DNA of 63,711 nucleotides, filler included, from Sluysia triapertura (taxonomy: Eukaryota), in the NCBI GenBank assembly GCA_046118255.1. It is 5 parts of 5 records of this genome, joined end to end, with 100 filler letters (N's around TTAATTAATTAA, not from the genome) between each part and the next. Parts side by side here need not be neighbours in the genome. Positions count along the whole stretch, not along the records: positions 13,352 to 26,636 come from JBJNIA010048452.1; 4 more parts are not named here. One strand, 5' to 3'. The notes under the pieces were generated by a model. It worked only from the letters and a program-made list of their open reading frames with translations. It made no database searches and was not told the origin of the DNA. The position numbers were made by a program, and so were the translations under genes. Shown here one piece after another: positions 4,702 to 58,666 of the stretch (its first letter is position 1; the number at the start of each line of letters is the position of its first letter).

Positions 4702-5030
4702 TGTTGGAATACAGACCTAAAGCGCCATGTAGTATAATGGACTAGTATAATCTAAAAATTGTCAGTGGGTAGAGCATCGAATTGCGCAGCAATAGATTCC
4801 CTGTTCGATCCCCGGTCAGTCCATCTTATGAAGTCTAACATTTGGTGAGCCCACTTATCGAATACTCTTCTGATGTTGAAATTAATTATTTATAAGATGT
4901 TTGAGGACAAACATAATTGAGATACGTTTGGATCCAAGCCTAAAGTGCCACATAGTATAATTGATTATAGTAATCTAAAAATTGTTAGAAGAGGCTGTTA
5001 TCTCAGTGGGTAGAGGTCCGAAATCTAACA
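4702..5030 (+). mobile_element. tRNA-LTR TRIM, two-LTR copy A
   Basis: LTR1 4702-4840 (TGTTGG...GTCTAACA), PBS-like TGGTGAGCCCA 4843-4853, short internal region, degenerate LTR2 4925-5030. Flanks ATAA/ACAA. Confidence 0.8.
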
Positions 5031-13780: not shown

Positions 13781-15383
13781 TGTTCAAAGACCCTTAATAA
13801 TAACTCAATCGAGACAAAAAGTTCCAAGTTATATTATCACAATTCTAAAAAAACTAAATACGATACTATAGAAAATTCAAATTCAAAGTCAATACAAAAT
13901 TCAAATATAATAAATAAAATGATAATTTATTATGGCTAGAATTCCTTCTAGTAATTTTTAAAAGTTTAACAATGAGATTATATTTAGTCTAAGATAAATG
14001 TTCAGTTGTGTAAGTTAAGTAAAATATTGTATTTCCTAATGGAAATAAACTTATAATAAAACTTATAAATACCTTTAATCAGCCGATAGCGAAAAAATCA
14101 GATTAAATCGATTGTCACTCGATCAGCAATAAACCAAAGTTAGGAATGATAGCTGGAATAAACATCAAAAAACTAATAAACTGAATCGCCAATAAACTAA
14201 TAAGCTGAATCGTTTGATTACTAAATACGCATCAAAATGAATCGTTTGAATACCGAACACTAATTTGTCGTCTACGTTTTTCTAATGAAAAAATTTAGAA
14301 AATGATTCTATTATATACTATCCTTAAGTTGTACTTTTAGTAACATTAATAATCATTTATTTTAGATAATTACTAATCAGCCAGTTTAAATGGGGCTATT
14401 TATTATTATACTTATACTTTATTTATTTTCATTTAGATAAGGTCATCTAAGGTAAGTTTAGTTTGTTATTGTTATTATTATTTCTTATCATTATTATTTT
14501 ATTTTCAGTTACAGATGATTACATACTGCAAGTATTTCTATTAAAAACTTAATATTACTTACAAAATATGTAATGAGTCGGTTCGCCTAATATATAGACG
14601 TTTTATACCACTATTGGAGACGTACTATTAGGATTTTTAAATCTTAACTCAATAACTTTAGAAAAACTTTTATATATGACTTATGGTTTATATGACAATG
14701 TAACTCTTCAATTAATTTATAATACAACCCTTTACGGGGTGTTGTTTAATTAAAATTAATTACGCAACCCGCATTAAGGTGTTGCTTCAAAATAAAAATG
14801 AGTTTAAGTATATTTTACTATTCCTTATTAAGGTGAATAGGCAAATTCTAACAATAAAAAATTACTTGGAAAGCATGGAGTAAAATGATTGTCTTCTGAA
14901 ACTTTGCTGGAAAAATGTTTTTTAAATTTGGTCTAAAAATTTGTGTAATTTATGCTAAAAAACTTACCTATTTATATAAAATTTATTTACTCCATATTGA
15001 AAGATGACTTCTATTTATTAAAGTGATTCACTTAAAGAAAATAAAGAAATAATTTAAATTTTGTCTTATTTAAACAAAATTTTATTTTTGAAATTTTCTG
15101 AGACATTCTTTTAACCTTGTAAAATGTTTGTAACCTTTGAAATGTTCAAGAATTAAAATCATGGTACATAATATCAAAGATAAATTTAATACATTAATAA
15201 TTGAAATAAAAAACAGAAAAATGAATCAGAATGGTTAAGGTGAGAGCACCTAAAGCCTCTGAGTACCTTAACAACTTTATAACCATAATAAAACCTTTAA
15301 ACTCAGAATGAAATAAGTTAAAATAATTAATTAATTAAAATCTTAAGAAAACTTACTATAGTGGTAGGGAAATTTTATTATTT

Positions 15384-15698
15384 TGTTGGATTAAAAACGC
15401 CTGAAGTGCCATTTGGTAAATTGACTATAATAATCTAAACTTGTTAGATAGGGCTGATAGCTCAGTGGTAGAAAATTGAACTGCGCAGCGATAAGTCCCG
15501 GGTTTGATCCCCGGTCAGTCCATTTTACGAAGTCTAACATTTGGTGAGCCCATATATCGAATACCCTTCTGATGTTGAAATTAATGATTTATAAGATGTT
15601 TGAGGTCAAACATAATTGAATTGGGAGAAATATGTTGGGTAAAAATGATTATAATAATCTAAGCTGATCCCCGGCCAGTCCTTTAATGAAGTCTAACA
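15384..15698 (+). mobile_element. tRNA-LTR TRIM, two-LTR copy B
   Basis: LTR1 15384-15539, PBS-like TGGTGAGCCCA 15542-15552, 93-bp internal region, PPT GGGAGAAA 15623-15630, deleted LTR2 15633-15698, ATTT on both flanks. Confidence 0.85.
15451..15522 (+). tRNA. tRNA-Ala-like pseudogene inside the TRIM LTR
   Basis: GGGCTGA/TCAGTCC acceptor stem with G3:U70, A box TAGCTCAGTGG, mutated B box GGTTTGATCCC, TTTT after the 3' end. Confidence 0.65.
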
Positions 15699-16211
15699 AT
15701 TTTATTATTCTAATTTATTATTTTAACATTGTTTTAACATTCCTATTATTATTATCATTATTATTTCATCTGTTTTTAAGGGATTTTAAAATCATTTGGT
15801 GGGAGACTCCCTTTGCAATATTTTTTATTTTAAAATTAGTTTTGTGAGAGACACCCCACACAATTTACTTTTCAAATATTAATTTTCTTAGTATATTACT
15901 GTAAAATTCTAGGAAGAATCTCTGCCCAAATTTTTGTTATAATATTTAATTGTAATTATGTTTGGTTAAGCTGTCTAGAAATATTTGGGCAGTATCATTA
16001 TTCTTCACTTTCCAGATATTGATATTTTTAGTGTCTGTTGCATCACTCCTGGCTTCTTTAGTTATATTGTAGTGTCTTTAATATTATTATAAACATTAGC
16101 CAGTTTGAATATTGTTTAGTAAAGATTTATAACATTAATAATTTACATTTTGATTTTTGTTTCATAGTAAATTACTGTTATTATTTGTAATAATTATAAT
16201 AGTAATAATAA

Positions 16212-16338
16212 TGTTAGACTTCATAAAATGGACTGATCGGGGATCGAACCCAGGACCTCTCGCTATCAGCCCCGTCTAACAATTTTAGATTATTATAGTC
16301 CATTATACCAAATGACACTTTAGGCCTGTATCCCAACA
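16212..16338 (-). mobile_element. Solo LTR of the tRNA-LTR TRIM (internal deletion)
   Basis: Reverse strand reads TGTTGGGATACAGGCCTAAAG...TGTTAGACGGGGCTGATAGCGAGAGGTCCTGGGTTCGATCCCC...GTCTAACA. ATAA on both flanks. Confidence 0.85.
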
Positions 16339-18772
16339 ATAATAATAGTATTAATAATAATTAATAACAGTAATAAAAATAATAATAATAATAACAATAA
16401 TAATAATAATATCCACTTCAATCTATTGTGTTTAATAGTGAAACTGATAATAAAACGATTTAATTTTTCTGATTTTTTCCGTTGTTTTATCTGATTAATA
16501 TTAAAGGAAATAATTGCCGCTCATTTAAAATGCACATCAATAAATAAATAAAACAGTTTTGCCGAATACGAAATAAAAACTGAAGTACACCTATAAGTCA
16601 CTAAATCTATTAAAACGTTCTTGTACAGTATTGGTAATAATGCACGACTAAGACAAACATTTTATTTCATGCTTTTTTGAAACTTATTTATAATTTTGTT
16701 ATCGATTTTCATTTATTAAATGATTACCTTTGCAAATTATTTACGTATTTTGATTTGTGGCAATTTTAAATGTGTAAGTGACTAGTGAGATTGAGTTAGC
16801 TTAATATTAGAATAATGTAGGATAATGCCGGATTCGAATCGTAATGAGTTGTGTAAAGGCATTACTCTACTAATTTCAATGACTACTTTTTTTTACCAAT
16901 AGAAGTTCAAATTCAAAATGCTACGTTAATGCTGTACATCCAAGAATCAAAGAAAGTGTAGATTACTGTGTACCATATTAAACTAACTATGAACATCTTC
17001 AACTTGTTTCAAACATTCTAAATTTATTGCAATGTCTACGTTTCGAAATAATGCTGATAAATATTTAGTGTCACATCAATTTAATGAAGTATTTAGTGTT
17101 AGAAGCAATTTTAGCTATCATTCAGAAACGGAATCTGAAGTAACTGCTGAAATATCATTAAAAAAGTAAAAAAATGATAACCATATGATTTTAAAATATG
17201 TCCGATATTTTATTATTGATAACTGACATTCAAATGATCCATCCTTAGATTGTTTAGACCACGTGCTACCGATAGATTATTATTTTTCAATTTGATTCTG
17301 AATCGTTACAAAGTATCTAAAACAACATTACTGATTATTTGCAACCAACTATCCAACTATTTTCTCTGTTTGAATTTAATTGACGATTCTTATTGAGAAA
17401 TAAAATAATCATTTATTACCATCGAAAATGATTAATTTTTGCTGCTGTGGCTGTACCTACCTAACAAATTTTATTTTAAAATGTAAAGAGTTCGCCTATC
17501 GTACAAGACTTACTCAATTAAGGGCTTGTGTAGGATTTTTACTTTATTTAATTTATTTACCAACTGGAATTTGTGATTTAATTCTTAAATATATTTTAAG
17601 TCCGTATTTAAAATAGGATTCAACATGATATTTTTAGATGCTTCTTTAAATTCGCCTTTTTATTATTAACATTTTTATTATGTATATTACGACTATTTAA
17701 ATCATTTAAATTAAAATGATTTATTACACTATTATCAAAATAAATAATAGTAATTTTACAATATTAAGGTTGTTTAGACCTTAATTGATACTTTTTATAA
17801 TTTAAAAAGGTTTACCTTGGGGACCTATTTAAAATGGTACTTGAAAAATATAAGATTTTACAGTAGATTTTAATACCGCTTAGGGTTACATATACTTATT
17901 GAGTAAATCTAACGTTATTTTAAGAAGCAAGCATAGGTTCCACGGCCAAAAGAAAATTAAACGTTGTTCTTGAACCAAATAGCTTTCCAAAGATTCCTTG
18001 AAACGTTTTGGCTTTTAAAATTAATTTATACAAAAATTGTTCTAACTTGTATGTTAATTTTTTACTAAATAATTTACTTATTTACTAAATGATTTCATTG
18101 AATGATTATTTATTTCAAATTCAAATAAATTTCCGTTTTCTGTTTTGTGTATATAATAAATTCATGTTTTTAAAAATAACTCCGTTTTGTAAAAATTTTT
18201 TTGAATCTAAACTACATTAATTTCGATAATATCAATAATTTATTAATTTTTTAGTTTATTAATTTCTTTTCATTCACATTAGATTTATTCATTTATCATT
18301 TGTTTTAATTATGTAATTAATTATTTAATTATTATTTAATTATAGACAATAACAGTGTAAAATAAGGTTAGATGAAATAATCTTGCTTCAGAAATAATCG
18401 TAAGATTGACAGAATCATTAAGAAATGATAGAAAAACAAAGATAAAATGGATCAAAAGAATTAGCGGAAGCCATTCAGAGTTAATATCTTGGAACTTGAA
18501 ACAATCGAATTGACATCTTGGACTCAAATAGTGCAGTCGTTCTAAAAGAAACGGTAGAGAAGAAAGTATCATATGGCAGAGTTAGTTTCACAGTTTTAGA
18601 GTATCATGAAGATTATATTTAAAAGGTAGAAACGTCAAATATCATAATAAAGTCACTAATTAGGTTCGTTTGTTTCTTTGTATTTCTCATTGAGTGCAAA
18701 GGGTTACATGACACTATTTTCGAATCATCTATTCATCTATTCTACTTATAGGTCACACACTAATATCTTCAT

Positions 18773-19748: not shown

Positions 19749-21040
19749 ATGAGGCGAGAAAAATATTCAGATGATTACAGAGATCGTAGAGATACTTATC
19801 ATGATTTAAATCCACTGAAACAACTTGCCAGAACTGTTATTGAGCTTCAAAAGTTATTTGGTTATGTTCTTTTTGATGTGTAGTCATGAAAATGATGGAA
19901 TATACAGAAAACATTATTCTATTTGTTTAAGCAAACTTCCTCATCGTTTATCAAATCACGATGTGCGCAATATTATTTATCGAGAGTGTGAACAAGTTGA
20001 TGATGATTTCAGTGTCAAATTTTCTACATACAATGGACAAAGAGTCGCATATATTAATTTTAGATCATCAAGAGATGCATCAGATGATCAGCATAAAGCT
20101 AATGATGATAAAAATAACGATTATACAATATGCAACAATGTAGTCAAGATTAATTTGATCTACAATAGTAAAAATATTAATGTTACAATTATGATTGTCC
20201 GCGATGATCAGCGTAAAGCTAATGATGATAAATATAACGATTATACTATTGTGAATTAAGTTTGACTCGATCGACACTTGTAAAGATAACAATGTTCCAG
20301 TTATGATTACTCGAGATGATCAGAATAAAGTCGATGAAGATGAATATGACGGTTACCAAATATGTAATAATAAAGTTATTAATGTTGAAGTCGAGCATTA
20401 TGATTCTTACAATTATAACCCTAATGATAATGAAGATAATGCTGAATGCGAATTTAATCAAATTAGGAGAAAGAAATATATTGATGTTAAAGCCAACAAC
20501 GAAGAAGAACTTTCTTTATTTGCCGTATAGACAAATTTTATAAACCTGAATGTTTTATAGTTAAATATTTTAATATTCATAAAAATAATATTTATACTAT
20601 TGATGATGGTAAACATAAGATTTATGAAAAGTATAATATTGACGATGAGCATTTTTGTAATGACTCTCGACATAGATATTACGAGCAGGATTACTGTAAG
20701 TCATATAGACGAAAATTTATTCGTACGACTGTTATGTGTCTAAGTTTTACTAATGATAATGATATCTGTTTAATGCGTGGTTTATACTGCTGATACATTC
20801 ATTCTATTCATGAACTTAAGTTCTGTGAACAAGATCAACTTACAACATGCACCTGCAACGAATTACAGAGTTGCTGAAGAACACTACAATCGTTTCAAAC
20901 ATTTCAGACGGCAATCTCAACGTAAGTAACGTCTTCTTATATTCATTATGTGAAACACCAACAAGAAGTGTCACGCATAGAAGTCAAATACCAAAATTAA
21001 ATCTTTTTAAAAATAAATTTTTATGTTATTATTTTCAGCT
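19749..21040 (+). pseudogene. Chimeric RNA-binding protein pseudogene: RBM15/Spenito-like RRM, three internal repeats, CCCH zinc finger
   Basis: YSICLSKLPHRLSNHDVRNIIYRECEQVDDDFSVKFSTYNGQRVAYINFRSSRDA. Repeats start at 20083, 20203 and 20315. C-x9-C-x6-C-x3-H followed by SIHELK at 20737-20820, with an in-frame TGA. Possible intron GTAAGT 20922 to TTTCAG 21038. Confidence 0.65.
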
Positions 21041-21592
21041 TTTTTTAAATAGAATAGGATAATTATTTGAAACAAAAAATGTTAAAGAAGAAATTTTAAT
21101 GAAAATTAATTTTAAATTTAGTAAAGTTGAAAATAATTTGATTTTAAATTTTAAAAATGATTATAACGTAAAAACTATATAATAATCCCTAGCAGCTCCA
21201 AAAAGTGTAATTGTACAAACAATAGTTTCACAAATTCAATTTATTGATATCAAATTGATCGTAGAGCGCGCAACACTCGACTTTTCCCGATCAATAATGT
21301 CGTACAATAAATAACCGGAAAACAAAATTTAGGTATCGTTAAACAATGAAAAATATTAAATGGAATTTTTATTCAAACTGTACATTTATATCATCATTTT
21401 TTGCATTGTTAATCATTCGTCATTGATTTATTGTGGATTGCAGTTTATCAATGGTGGCGCGCAACATAAACTGTCGCCTTGACAACTCACGTACTTTCTA
21501 CATACGATTAAGTATATTTTAAATTGCTTATTATATTTAATAATTTTTTGTTTTAATATTACTATTTGCGGTTAATTAAAAGTCGAATTGAA

Positions 21593-22358
21593 TAGGGTGT
21601 CCCAAAAGTAACCGAACCGCAAACTTAAATAAAACTTAGATACCATTTCCTTCTGCGAATAATAGTCTTTGAAATGATTTTTGATCTTGTTCTGCCCTCA
21701 TTGCTTGATTTTCGCTCCGCGTGTGCTTCTGGGCCCTCATTCTTAAAAATTAAGCGAAGGACTTTCGCTTTAACGAACGCATCTTCGTTATTAAGAATTA
21801 AGAATTCCTTGACTAGTTACAAGCACGTTGAAGAAAGATGGGAAGCAAACTTCAAATCAGCTGTACCGAGTAAGTCGACAATGTTCAATCTTGTATCCAA
21901 ATTTGAAGTAACTGGAAGTATGTCAAATGCTCCTAAAGGTCGTCCGAAAACAGTTCGTTCACCTGAAAACAGGGATATAGTGGCAGTTGCATTTGTTCAC
22001 TTATTCACTACACCAAAGATGATCGACAATAGCTTGATGAAACGTTGGACTATGAGATACCCGGATCTGACACAGCCTGCTTTTTTTCTAAAGGAAGTTC
22101 TAAAGAACGCAGTTTATGCTAAAAAGCCTAAGACAATTGATCAACTAAAACAAAGTATTCAGCACGAATGGAACCAAATTTCAGAGGATACTTGCCAGAA
22201 AGTATGTTGCAGTGTCGTCAAAAGATCTCATGCCTGTATTGAAGTTCAAGGTGGACATTTTGAATATTTGTAAATACTAAATATACCTATTAAATTTGTC
22301 GTTTTTGATATCTAATTTTTATTTAAGTTTGGGGTTCGGTTACTTTTGGGACAGCCTA
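21593..22358 (+). mobile_element. Internally deleted maT/DD37D-like element, copy 2
   Basis: TIRs of about 50 bp (TAGGGTGTCCCAAAAGTAACCGAACC... / ...GGTTCGGTTACTTTTGGGACAGCCTA). ORF 21674-22273 fuses the HTH region (KFEVTGS, GRPKTVRSPEN) to the C-terminus (PDLT, GGHFEYL); the catalytic core is missing. Confidence 0.93.
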
Positions 22359-22859
22359 TATATTAAAAATTAAAATCGATGTATCATTCAAATTGTAACG
22401 CAGATTCTAAATCTAATGCGGCACAAAATGCAAAAAAGTTATGTTGAAAAGACACTTGTAATAATAAATTTATAATTTATAGCAAATAATAATAATATTA
22501 AATAATAATGATAATAATAATGGTAATAAAACTGTTTAAATATTGTTGTGCATAACCACCAACTGCATTTTATACAATAGTTTAAACAACAACAACAACT
22601 TATGTGCTGTCCCTAACATCTACATTATAATAAAATAACAGCGACATTGAAGTTAATTATTTTAGCGCCAGATCTGACAGTTATTAATATTTTTGCAGTG
22701 TGCTGAAATTAGATTAGATCTCAATTGTCATAACAATTTGGAACAGCAAAATAATGAAACAGAACACAAATTTACACTAAACTAATTATAAAATTGATAC
22801 TATTTATTGATTTGGATACCTGTTAAATATTTTGCATAAAAACTTATTGAAAAATATAA

Positions 22860-23260
22860 GCATTATTGAAGAAGAATGATAAATTTGAAAACATCTAGAA
22901 TCGTTTTAATAGTCGTCTTAAATATTAAAGAACATCTTAGAGTTTCTAAAGACCTTTATAAAATCGTGGGATCCTGAAGAACCTTAAGAACTTTTAAAGA
23001 CTATTTAATGCTTTTAGAACTCTAATATGTGTGTAATATCATAAGAGATTCTTGTGGAGTGTGACATTTTTGAAGTGATTGTGAAATAGAATTAGTGTCA
23101 TTGATAACAAAGACAATTTAATACGTTAATGTAGCACAGATTAGTAGATTGGTAACGATAAAACCTTATCAAACACCTAATTTACAACCTTTTAACATAA
23201 ATAGAGTAAATTCTAAAAATAGATTAAATAATTAAAATCTTAATTAAGTTGTATAACGGG
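22860..23260. repeat. Partial modular-repeat member (9-bp periodic block and TTAATTAA-rich block)
   Basis: gaacatctta/gacctttat/gaaacctta/gaactttta arrays and ATTAAAATCTTAATTAA, as at 9050-9470. Confidence 0.5.
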
Positions 23261-58503: not shown

Positions 58504-58666
58504 TGTTGGGGCAAAAAGGCCTAAAAAAAAGTGCCAAGTAGTATAATTGAATATAATGAAAATGAAAAAGTTAGACGGGGCTGATAGCTCAGTGGTAGAG
58601 AAGTCGAACTGCGCAGCGATGGTCCCGGGTTCGATCCCCGGTCAGTCCATTTTACGAAGTCTAACA
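58504..58666 (+). mobile_element. Solo LTR of the tRNA-LTR TRIM
   Basis: TGTTGG...GTCTAACA flanked by the 4-bp duplication GTAT (58500-58503 and 58667-58670). Confidence 0.88.
58578..58649 (+). tRNA. tRNA-Ala-like gene inside the LTR (best-preserved copy)
   Basis: Acceptor GGGCTGA/TCAGTCC with G3:U70 and A73. A box TAGCTCAGTGG, T arm CCGGG-TTCGATC-CCCGG, TTTT terminator at 58650. Anticodon arm irregular. Confidence 0.7.

What the first reader, a model, noticed from the sequence alone, without database searches (positions are those of the whole stretch)
15384..15698. Miniature LTR retrotransposon whose LTRs carry a tRNA-Ala-like gene (tRNA analogue of Cassandra)
Seen: this repeat superficially resembles a tRNA-SINE, but every copy runs from TGTTGG to CTAACA with the tRNA in the middle. 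Copies 4702-5030 and 15384-15698 are LTR, TT, TGGTGAGCCCA (PBS-like), ~90 bp, LTR, and copy B has GGGAGAAA (PPT) just before LTR2. Copies 16212-16338 and 58504-58666 are solo LTRs. Flanks are 4-bp duplications: GTAT/GTAT, ATTT/ATTT, ATAA/ATAA and ATAA/ACAA. Established: TRIMs have this layout, and plant Cassandra TRIMs carry 5S Pol III promoters in their LTRs. Inference: a ~415-bp non-autonomous element transcribed from a tRNA-type Pol III promoter and mobilised by a 4-bp-TSD integrase. I know of no described animal example, but could not search.
Basis: partly seen in the sequence, partly recalled or inferred. Interest (0 to 1): 0.93.

Follow-up and report, generated by a model that had tools for sequence, protein, structure and literature searches.

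The report
Helenus-type TRIM with tRNA-like LTRs
This is a decayed 315-bp copy, plus a nearby solo repeat, of a tiny gene-less LTR retrotransposon whose terminal repeats carry a tRNA-derived Pol III promoter; it is real, but this kind of element ('Helenus') was described in animals in 2024, so at most it is a new family.

Summary
Window 15384-15698 reads: 156-bp repeat (TGTTGG...CTAACA), TT, TGGTGAGCCCA, a 93-bp internal part ending in GGGAGAAA-TA, then a 66-bp deleted copy of the repeat. ATTT flanks both sides. An inverted solo repeat at 16212-16338 has ATAA on both sides.

The 5' repeat holds a degenerate tRNA (Rfam 30.6 bits). It has an exact A box, a near-exact B box, an intact acceptor stem with G3:U70, and a T4 run directly behind it.

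Contigs of a public run show a very abundant family. Many copies end exactly at CTAACA next to unrelated DNA. Others run on from CTAACA into the TGG... site, and one runs gaplessly through the whole internal part. This is the behaviour of an LTR element, not of a SINE.

Its novelty premise is not. Kojima 2024 (PMC10886601) described exactly this class as Helenus (TRIMp3): six animal phyla, 4-bp duplications, Gypsy-type primer sites, sizes bracketing this one. No 8-14-mer tried, apart from generic tRNA motifs, occurs in the published Helenus consensus file, so this is probably an unlisted family. The host is unidentified (26% G+C, arthropod-like transposon context). Pol III transcription and the autonomous partner remain inferred.

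The parts
15380..15383 (+). Left target-site duplication ATTT
   Evidence: identical to 15699-15702. Chance of a 4-bp match at this spacing is 0.9%.
15384..15539 (+). 5' LTR, 156 nt, TGTTGG...CTAACA
   Evidence: 88.8% identical to the solo copy outside a 28-nt gap. Many contigs of run X1 end exactly at 15539 next to unrelated DNA (table 7).
15384..15450 (+). 67-nt leader upstream of the tRNA-like part (U3-like). It contains a TATAATAA block at 15426-15433, about 25 nt before the tRNA-like start; the block TATAATAATCTAA is identical in all three repeat copies.
   Evidence: Alignment; role inferred.
15451..15522 (+). tRNA-like module. The acceptor stem (with G3:U70) and the T arm are intact; the D and anticodon arms are degenerate.
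   Evidence: Rfam RF00005, 30.6 bits; fold; no ARAGORN call.
15458..15468 (+). A box TAGCTCAGTGG (exact match to TRGCNNAGTGG)
15501..15511 (+). B box GGTTTGATCCC (one departure from GGTTCGANNCC). Most other copies in run X1 read C at 15505.
   Evidence: table 3.
15523..15526 (+). TTTT directly after the tRNA-like part; the only T4 run in the 5' LTR plus internal part (Pol III terminator-like)
   Evidence: A T-run follows the tRNA-like part in the published Helenus LTRs seen.
15540..15632 (+). Internal part, 93 nt, no reading frame
   Evidence: An X1 contig aligns gaplessly from 15478 to 15638 (table 8, record 2).
15542..15552 (+). Primer-binding-site-like TGGTGAGCCCA, 2 nt after the LTR
   Evidence: 10/11 to the complement of the honeybee tRNA-Trp 3' end as printed in Fig. 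S2 of PMC10886601, and 11/12 with the C that most X1 copies carry at 15553.
15596..15613 (+). Local palindrome ATGTTTGA-GG-TCAAACAT just upstream of the purine tract
   Evidence: The internal part as a whole does not fold better than shuffles (z 0.27), so this is weak.
15623..15630 (+). Polypurine-tract-like GGGAGAAA, 2 nt before the 3' LTR
15633..15698 (+). 3' LTR, 66 nt. Both termini are kept; three deletions remove part of the leader and the whole tRNA part except its last 20 or so nt.
   Evidence: 89.4% identity to the 5' LTR and 93.9% to the solo copy over aligned columns.
15699..15702 (+). Right target-site duplication ATTT
16212..16338 (-). Solo LTR, 127 nt, inverted relative to the full copy. 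A 28-nt deletion removes the A box; the B box GGTTCGATCCC and the T4 run are kept. Flanked by ATAA (16208-11) and ATAA (16339-42).
   Evidence: (I2, I3). 241 X1 contigs end at 16212 next to unrelated DNA.

Best explanation
This is a dead copy of a non-autonomous, gene-less LTR retrotransposon (a TRIM) of the Helenus / TRIMp3 kind, together with a solo LTR of the same family 513 bp away.

Each intact LTR (156 bp) reads: a 67-nt leader, a tRNA-derived module with A and B boxes, a T4 run, and 13 nt ending in CA. Between the LTRs lie a primer-binding site for a host tRNA 3' end (closest to tRNA-Trp), about 70 nt of spacer, and a polypurine tract.

Likely mechanism (inferred). RNA synthesis starts near the 5' end of the tRNA-like module of the 5' LTR. 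It is driven by the internal A and B boxes, probably helped by the conserved TATA-like block 25 nt upstream. Some transcripts read through the weak T4 stop, cross the primer site and internal part, and stop at the same T4 in the 3' LTR. The tRNA-like module then serves as the terminal redundancy (R), the 13 nt behind it as U5, and the leader as U3. The RNA is packaged, reverse-transcribed from a host tRNA primer, and integrated by the proteins of an autonomous LTR element (Gypsy-like, judged by the 4-bp duplication), which regenerates both LTRs. Recombination between LTRs gives solo LTRs and possibly tandem arrays.

Shown: the anatomy, the duplications, and the family-wide repeat end and internal part. 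Inferred: the polymerase, the start and stop of the RNA, the primer tRNA, and the partner element.
For: Anatomy and flanks were read directly and aligned.
- All three repeat copies keep TGTTGG and GAAGTCTAACA despite different internal deletions.
- The 4-bp duplication surrounds the composite, not either LTR alone, and a second 4-bp duplication surrounds the solo copy. Chance is about 1% each.
- tRNA call: 30.6 bits, an exact A box, a B box with one departure, and a single T4 directly behind.

Run X1 gives family-wide support.
- 18110 contigs were laid on the 1.4-kb stretch at 80% likeness or more.
- 164 contigs end at 15539 and 241 at 16212, next to unrelated AT-rich DNA (agreement 0.43).
- At least 121 contigs carry the change at 15553, which lies beyond the LTR end inside the primer site.
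- One 285-nt contig aligns gaplessly from 15478 to 15638, from the LTR through the whole internal part to the start of the next LTR.
- Where most other copies differ from this one (15473-74, 15505), they read the letters of a canonical D stem and B box.

The class description in PMC10886601 matches. Animal Helenus have 4-bp duplications, LTRs of 104-323 bp, internal parts of 43-621 bp, TT or T before a TGG primer site, a purine tract, a leader before the tRNA-like part and a T-run after it. One wasp family uses tRNA-Trp.
Against: - Only one two-LTR copy is available to me, and its 3' LTR is 66 nt without any tRNA part. The two LTRs differ far more than those of a young insertion would.
- The duplications are AT-only in DNA that is 74% A+T.
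- The primer site has one mismatch to bee tRNA-Trp, and the host's own tRNAs are unknown.
- The T4 directly after the tRNA-like part should stop much Pol III transcription before the primer site, so a Pol II or read-through origin of the template RNA is not excluded.
- The summed contig depth in X1 is as high over the start of the internal part as over the LTR, and lower over the leader. This does not fit a simple two-LTRs-per-internal count. The tool warns that depth is no copy number; tandem arrays and leader-length variants could explain it.
- No autonomous partner was seen in 13 kb.
- No RNA data are available.
Confidence: 0.8

Rival explanations
1. The repeats are LTRs of a longer LTR retrotransposon or LARD family, and the 315-bp unit is a one-off internal deletion of such an element rather than a member of a dedicated miniature family.
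For: Only one two-LTR copy could be read here. The TGTTGG...CTAACA termini are generic for LTR elements; fungal Helenus and Copia-type elements share them.
Against: An independent X1 contig runs gaplessly from the LTR through the same 93-nt internal part to the next TGTTGG (table 8, record 2). Another contig joins 15623, near the end of the internal part, to the LTR leader through 22 other letters (table 5c). Many contigs cover the internal part. The short form is therefore itself repeated.
Confidence: 0.08
2. It is a tRNA-derived SINE (SINE2). Two adjacent or nested SINE insertions mimic an LTR-internal-LTR layout, and mobilisation is by a LINE.
For: A tRNA-like head with A and B boxes, very high copy number, and contig depth peaking from the tRNA-like part into the following 50 nt.
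Against: The unit starts 67 nt upstream of the tRNA-like part with a conserved leader and a fixed TGTTGG end, which an internal Pol III promoter would not copy. It ends at CTAACA with no A-rich or simple-repeat tail. Hundreds of contigs stop exactly there. The duplications are 4 bp in both local cases. TGG lies 2 nt after the repeat and a purine tract 2 nt before the next.
Confidence: 0.06
3. It is a small DNA transposon (MITE) with 6-bp terminal inverted repeats and 4-bp duplications, two copies of which happen to lie 93 bp apart.
For: The termini TGTTGG and CTAACA are 5/6 inverted. The 127-156-bp units have their own ends. Some DNA transposon superfamilies make 4-bp duplications (from memory: Sola).
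Against: Neither repeat of the composite has its own duplication (ATTT/TTTG and AATA/ATTT); the duplication surrounds the composite. The primer-site-like and purine-tract-like motifs sit exactly at the two inner junctions. X1 contigs continue from the repeat into the same internal part.
Confidence: 0.03

Closest known systems
Helenus (TRIMp3), Kojima 2024, Biology 13:119 (PMC10886601)
   Same: Gene-less LTR element a few hundred bp long. The tRNA-derived sequence with A and B boxes sits inside each LTR, behind a leader and before a T-run. The ends are TG..CA, with a TGG primer site 0-3 nt after the 5' LTR, a purine tract before the 3' LTR, 4-bp duplications in animals, and solo LTRs. The sizes (LTR 156, internal 93, full 405) fall within the published animal range, for example Helenus-4_ArIr at 156/113/425. 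The motif GCGAGAGGTCC.GGGTTCGATCCCC of the solo copy recurs in bivalve, nemertean, brachiopod and sturgeon families.
   Different: No 8-14-mer tried from the leader, LTR end, LTR-primer junction or primer site occurs in the published consensus file, so it is not one of the listed families. The termini TGTTGG...CTAACA resemble the fungal (Copia-linked, 5-bp) families rather than the TGTA/TGTG...TACA ends of the listed animal ones, yet the duplication is 4 bp. The DNA is very AT-rich, unlike the GC-rich wasp families. The primer site TGGTGAGCCCA is not among those listed. The host is unidentified.
Cassandra TRIMs of plants (Kalendar et al. 2008; described in PMC10853983 and PMC10886601)
   Same: A TRIM whose LTRs carry a small-RNA-gene-derived Pol III promoter. 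It has solo LTRs, and tandem LTR-internal-LTR arrays are well known.
   Different: Cassandra carries 5S rRNA-derived sequence, whereas this element carries tRNA-derived sequence; Rfam reports only a tRNA match in the whole piece. Cassandra is found in plants. Its transcription from the Pol III promoter was shown experimentally (as stated); nothing has been shown for this element.
tRNA-derived SINEs (SINE2)
   Same: A tRNA-derived A/B-box module, short length, no genes, high copy number. A SINE2 inserted in a TRIM LTR is the proposed origin of Helenus.
   Different: This element has a leader before the tRNA part, fixed TG..CA ends, paired repeats, a primer site and purine tract, a fixed 4-bp duplication and no tail. 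Mobilisation is therefore by an LTR-element integrase and reverse transcriptase, not by a LINE.
Canonical TRIMs (Witte et al. 2001; animal examples in bivalves PMC6934838, Echinococcus PMC4558846)
   Same: Miniature LTR-primer site-purine tract-LTR layout, non-autonomous, with solo LTRs.
   Different: Canonical TRIMs have no small-RNA-derived module in the LTR and presumably use Pol II promoters ('TRIMp2' in Kojima's terms).

Membership tests
Helenus / TRIMp3 | Two direct terminal repeats with TG...CA ends flanking a short internal part | tested here: met
   15384-15539 and 15633-15698 share TGTTGG and GAAGTCTAACA. The 3' copy is deleted to 66 nt.
Helenus / TRIMp3 | Miniature size and no coding capacity | tested here: met
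   315 bp as found and 405 bp if both LTRs were whole. No ORF of 70 aa or more overlaps it. The published range is 311-1263 bp.
Helenus / TRIMp3 | tRNA-derived sequence with box A and box B inside the LTR | tested here: met
   Rfam tRNA 30.6 bits at 15451-15522. A box exact, B box with one departure. Only the 5' LTR keeps both boxes; the solo copy keeps only the B box, and the 3' LTR keeps neither.
Helenus / TRIMp3 | Primer-binding site complementary to a tRNA just after the 5' LTR | tested here: inconclusive
   TGGTGAGCCCA starts 2 nt after the LTR. It matches the complement of the bee tRNA-Trp 3' end at 10/11, or 11/12 with the majority letter of other copies. The host's tRNAs are not available.
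Helenus / TRIMp3 | Polypurine tract just before the 3' LTR | tested here: met
   GGGAGAAA at 15623-30, 2 nt before TGTTGG.
Helenus / TRIMp3 | 4-bp target-site duplication (animal families) | tested here: met
   ATTT/ATTT and ATAA/ATAA; 5-bp flanks do not match. About 1% chance each. Only two cases.
Helenus / TRIMp3 | Dispersed family with solo LTRs | tested here: met
   Solo copy at 16212-16338. Hundreds of X1 contigs end at the LTR end next to unrelated DNA, while others continue into the primer site.
Helenus / TRIMp3 | Sequence identity with a published Helenus family | tested here: not met
   Eighteen 8-14-mers were tried in the published consensus file. Those from the leader, LTR end, primer site and tRNA acceptor end were absent or matched only unrelated positions; generic tRNA motifs and the short end TCTAACA did occur. 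Line wrapping in the file could hide some matches. This bears on which family it is, not on the kind.
Helenus / TRIMp3 | Autonomous Gypsy partner sharing the primer site | not testable with these tools
   No reverse transcriptase or integrase was found in the 13-kb piece, and no genome access.
Helenus / TRIMp3 | Transcription by RNA polymerase III | not testable with these tools
   No RNA run holds the stretch. This is also unproven for the published Helenus.
tRNA-derived SINE (SINE2) | tRNA-derived head at the very 5' end of the unit | tested here: not met
   A 67-nt leader conserved between the 5' LTR and the solo copy lies inside the duplications.
tRNA-derived SINE (SINE2) | A-rich or simple-repeat 3' tail and duplications of variable length | tested here: not met
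   The unit ends at CTAACA with a 4-bp duplication in both cases. The family-wide end lies at the same base.
Cassandra | 5S rRNA-derived sequence in the LTR | tested here: not met
   The Rfam scan of the whole piece at E up to 1 gives only the tRNA match.

The most novel reading that the evidence does not exclude
This is an undescribed and unusually abundant Helenus family in a host lineage outside those listed in 2024 (among arthropods only chalcidoid and cynipid wasps are listed). It combines Copia-like TGTTGG...CTAACA termini with 4-bp duplications. Its LTRs come in leader-length variants that each begin with TGTTRG. Its terminal redundancy is set by a Pol III start and a leaky T4 stop flanking the tRNA-like module.
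Probability: 0.3. Interest if true: 0.4.

Novelty: new member of a known kind. Interest (0 to 1): 0.3.

Why it matters
It shows that tRNA-bearing TRIMs occur, apparently at very high copy number, in at least one more very AT-rich animal-type genome. Such elements inflate tRNA gene predictions and are easily misannotated as SINEs. They scatter potential TFIIIC/Pol III binding sites. A family with many copies would be good material for testing whether Pol III really makes the template RNA of an LTR element and how a T-run inside the LTR is bypassed. That question is still open for the whole Helenus class. It does not open a new category: the category was named in 2024.

Tried and rejected
- ARAGORN found no tRNA. 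The module is pseudogene-grade and only the Rfam model reaches its threshold.
- Exact-pattern scans for the LTR end and the LTR-primer junction found nothing in viral contigs or in JGI metagenome contigs. No extra copies with flanks could be fetched.
- Host identification failed. Three window ORFs are not on record by exact look-up. Relatives of the mariner-like ORF (65-69% identity) lie on ENA contigs of 37-40% G+C that hold no copy of the element. The two protein-atlas searches gave only weak leads: arthropod-type transposase families and a generic RRM.
- The internal part does not fold better than shuffles (z 0.27), and the tRNA-like part only marginally so (z -1.64).
- Contig depth in X1 was not used as a copy number, because the tool says it cannot serve as one.
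- The tRNA-like 3' end (GGTCAGTCCA) is not complementary to the element's own primer site, so self-priming is rejected. The same is reported for published Helenus.
- Kalendar 2008 (PMC2311327) is not held.
- I built no family consensus.

Full report
**What is in the sequence**

I read window 15200-16500 directly.

- A 156-nt unit runs from TGTTGG (15384) to GAAGTCTAACA (15539).
- It is followed by TT, then TGGTGAGCCCA (15542-15552).
- The 93-nt stretch between the repeats (15540-15632) ends in GGGAGAAA-TA.
- A second unit follows at 15633-15698, again from TGTTGG to GAAGTCTAACA.
- The four bases on either side of the composite are ATTT (15380-83 and 15699-702).
- An inverted third unit lies at 16212-16338, flanked by ATAA on both sides.
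- Five-base flanks do not match in either case.

In this piece (26% G+C) a 4-base flank match at these spacings occurs at 0.9-1.2% of positions. Neither repeat of the composite has a duplication of its own, so the duplication belongs to the composite.

Pairwise alignments give these figures.

- 5' repeat against solo copy: 88.8% identity, apart from a 28-nt gap in the solo copy.
- 5' repeat against 3' repeat: 89.4% over the 66 columns the 3' repeat retains.

The 3' repeat has lost about 25 nt of leader and nearly the whole tRNA-like part, yet keeps both termini. This is an old, decayed insertion.

**The tRNA-like module**

Rfam's tRNA model matches 15451-15522 at 30.6 bits (threshold 29, E 0.0045). 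It is the only Rfam match in the 13-kb piece. ARAGORN calls nothing.

The acceptor stem is complete (GGGCTGA/TCAGTCC, with a G3:U70 pair) and so is the T arm. The D and anticodon arms do not pair in this copy. That judgement rests on my knowledge of tRNA-Ala, and the isotype cannot be fixed.

The A box TAGCTCAGTGG (15458-68) is exact. The B box GGTTTGATCCC (15501-11) has one departure. The only run of four T in the 5' repeat plus internal part sits directly after the discriminator base, at 15523-26. No CCA is encoded. The module therefore looks like a tRNA gene with its terminator, not a retroposed mature tRNA.

The solo copy keeps the B box and the T4 but not the A box. The 3' repeat keeps neither box.

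**The rest of the family**

The one run found to hold the stretch (X1; organism coded; Logan contigs) was laid on 15100-16500 at 80% likeness or more. 18110 contigs were laid. Four results bear on the question.

1. 164 contigs end at 15539 and 241 at 16212. These are the same CTAACA end on the two local copies. The DNA beyond has no consensus (agreement 0.43), so in many places in that genome the repeat stops exactly at CTAACA next to unrelated DNA.
2. At least 121 contigs carry a difference at 15553, inside the TGG... site. Many copies therefore continue from CTAACA into that site. With that majority letter the site reads TGGTGAGCCCAC.
3. A 285-nt contig aligns without gaps from 15478 to 15638. 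It runs from the repeat through the whole 93-nt internal part to the next TGTTGG. Another contig joins 15623, near the end of the internal part, to the repeat's leader (15423) through 22 other letters (table 5c). The miniature form is therefore itself repeated.
4. Where most other copies differ from this one inside the module (15473-74, 15505), they read the letters of a canonical D stem and B box.

A repeat that either stops at a fixed base or continues into a TGG site is what an LTR element gives: 3' LTRs and solo LTRs against 5' LTRs. A SINE does not behave this way.

I did not use summed depth as a copy number, because the tool warns against it. I note that it is as high over 15523-15569 as over the repeat and lower over the leader. 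Tandem LTR-internal-LTR arrays could account for this; they are described for Cassandra, other TRIMs and LTR-11_DR. So could leader-length variants. It remains unexplained.

**What it is**

The features add up to a terminal-repeat retrotransposon in miniature whose LTRs carry a tRNA-derived Pol III promoter module:

- paired repeats with TG..CA ends;
- a TGG site 2 nt after the first repeat;
- a purine tract 2 nt before the second;
- a 4-bp duplication around the whole;
- a solo repeat with its own 4-bp duplication;
- no reading frame.

**How it most likely works (inferred)**

The A and B boxes would place a Pol III start at about the first base of the tRNA-like module. A TATAATAA block lies 25 nt upstream (15426-33). 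The block TATAATAATCTAA is the only part of the leader identical in all three copies, and it would fit either polymerase.

For the RNA to be a retrotransposition template it must cross the T4 at 15523-26, then the primer site and the internal part. The internal part contains no T4. The RNA must then end in the 3' LTR, most simply at the same T4.

- R would be the tRNA-like module.
- U5 would be the 13 nt behind it.
- U3 would be the 67-nt leader.

A T-run shortly after the tRNA-like part, still inside the LTR, is also visible in the published Helenus LTRs that I saw from nemerteans, a brachiopod, a mussel and wasps.

Reverse transcription would be primed by a host tRNA. The site is closest to the complement of honeybee tRNA-Trp as printed in Fig. 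S2 of PMC10886601: TGGTGACCCCAC against TGGTGAGCCCAC. The proteins must come from an autonomous element. The 4-bp duplication points to a Gypsy-type integrase, as proposed for all animal Helenus. None of these steps is shown here.

**Comparison with what is known**

A literature search found Kojima 2024 (PMC10886601). [quoted passage not shown] It groups them with Cassandra (5S, plants) and Ajax (5S, nemerteans) as TRIMp3.

- Helenus is reported from fungi, one plant and six animal phyla. Among arthropods only chalcidoid and cynipid wasps are listed.
- Animal families make 4-bp duplications and share primer sites with Gypsy elements.
- Published sizes are LTR 104-323 bp and internal part 43-621 bp. 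This element is 156/93, giving 405 in full.

This element meets every structural criterion that I could test (see the membership table).

It is not one of the published families. The 8-14-mers taken from its leader, LTR end, primer site and acceptor end are absent from the consensus file. Generic tRNA motifs and the short end TCTAACA do occur there. Its termini resemble those of the fungal, Copia-linked families, although its duplication is 4 bp. Later papers that cite Helenus add no arthropod lineages.

**Host**

The host is unknown. The piece has 26% G+C and carries a Tc1/mariner-type remnant with a DUF4817 helix-turn-helix, a family seen mostly in arthropods. Exact look-ups and relatives' contigs gave no identification and no further copies.

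**Verdict**

This is a real feature and it was correctly read. It belongs to a kind described in 2024, and is most likely an unlisted family. Pol III use, the primer tRNA and the partner remain to be shown, as they do for the whole class. I compared copies only and built no family consensus; that step is listed under referred steps.

Noticed in passing
window 21592-22359: Internally deleted Tc1/mariner-type element. It has 54-nt terminal inverted repeats (93% complementary), TA on both sides, and a 199-aa ORF (21674-22273) with a weak DUF4817 helix-turn-helix and a transposase C-terminal remnant. The closest proteins are 65-69% identical, on ENA metagenome-assembly contigs.
   Followed up: partly
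window 15100-15334 and 23069-23247: Another high-copy repeat lies immediately upstream of the element. Many X1 contigs match it, with loose ends at 15112 and 15268-70 (agreement 0.67-0.73). A degenerate second copy (61-75% identity) lies at 23069-23247. The family is unidentified.
   Followed up: partly
window 15442-15448 and 15412-15417: The LTR leader holds internal TGTTAG and ATTTGG sites. An X1 contig joins an LTR end to 15442 through 11 other letters, and the 3' LTR's leader aligns as if it began at the second site. LTR variants with shorter leaders, each starting TGTTRG, may exist. Unexplained.
   Followed up: no
window 19825-20530: An open frame with an RRM-like stretch (YINFRSSRDA), followed by three copies of a 112-120-bp repeat (20083-20361) that encode D/N/K-rich peptide. 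There is no Pfam hit and only weak atlas leads. It could be an exon of a host RNA-binding protein gene.
   Followed up: partly
window 15745-16100: The spacer between the full copy and the solo LTR is itself matched by many X1 contigs at about 90% likeness, so it is also repetitive DNA. The whole neighbourhood looks like nested repeats.
   Followed up: no
window 16340-16420: An (AAT)n-rich 9-bp-periodic microsatellite directly abuts the solo LTR. The reads tool skipped it as a repeat, so the family-wide 5' end of the LTR could not be read there.
   Followed up: no
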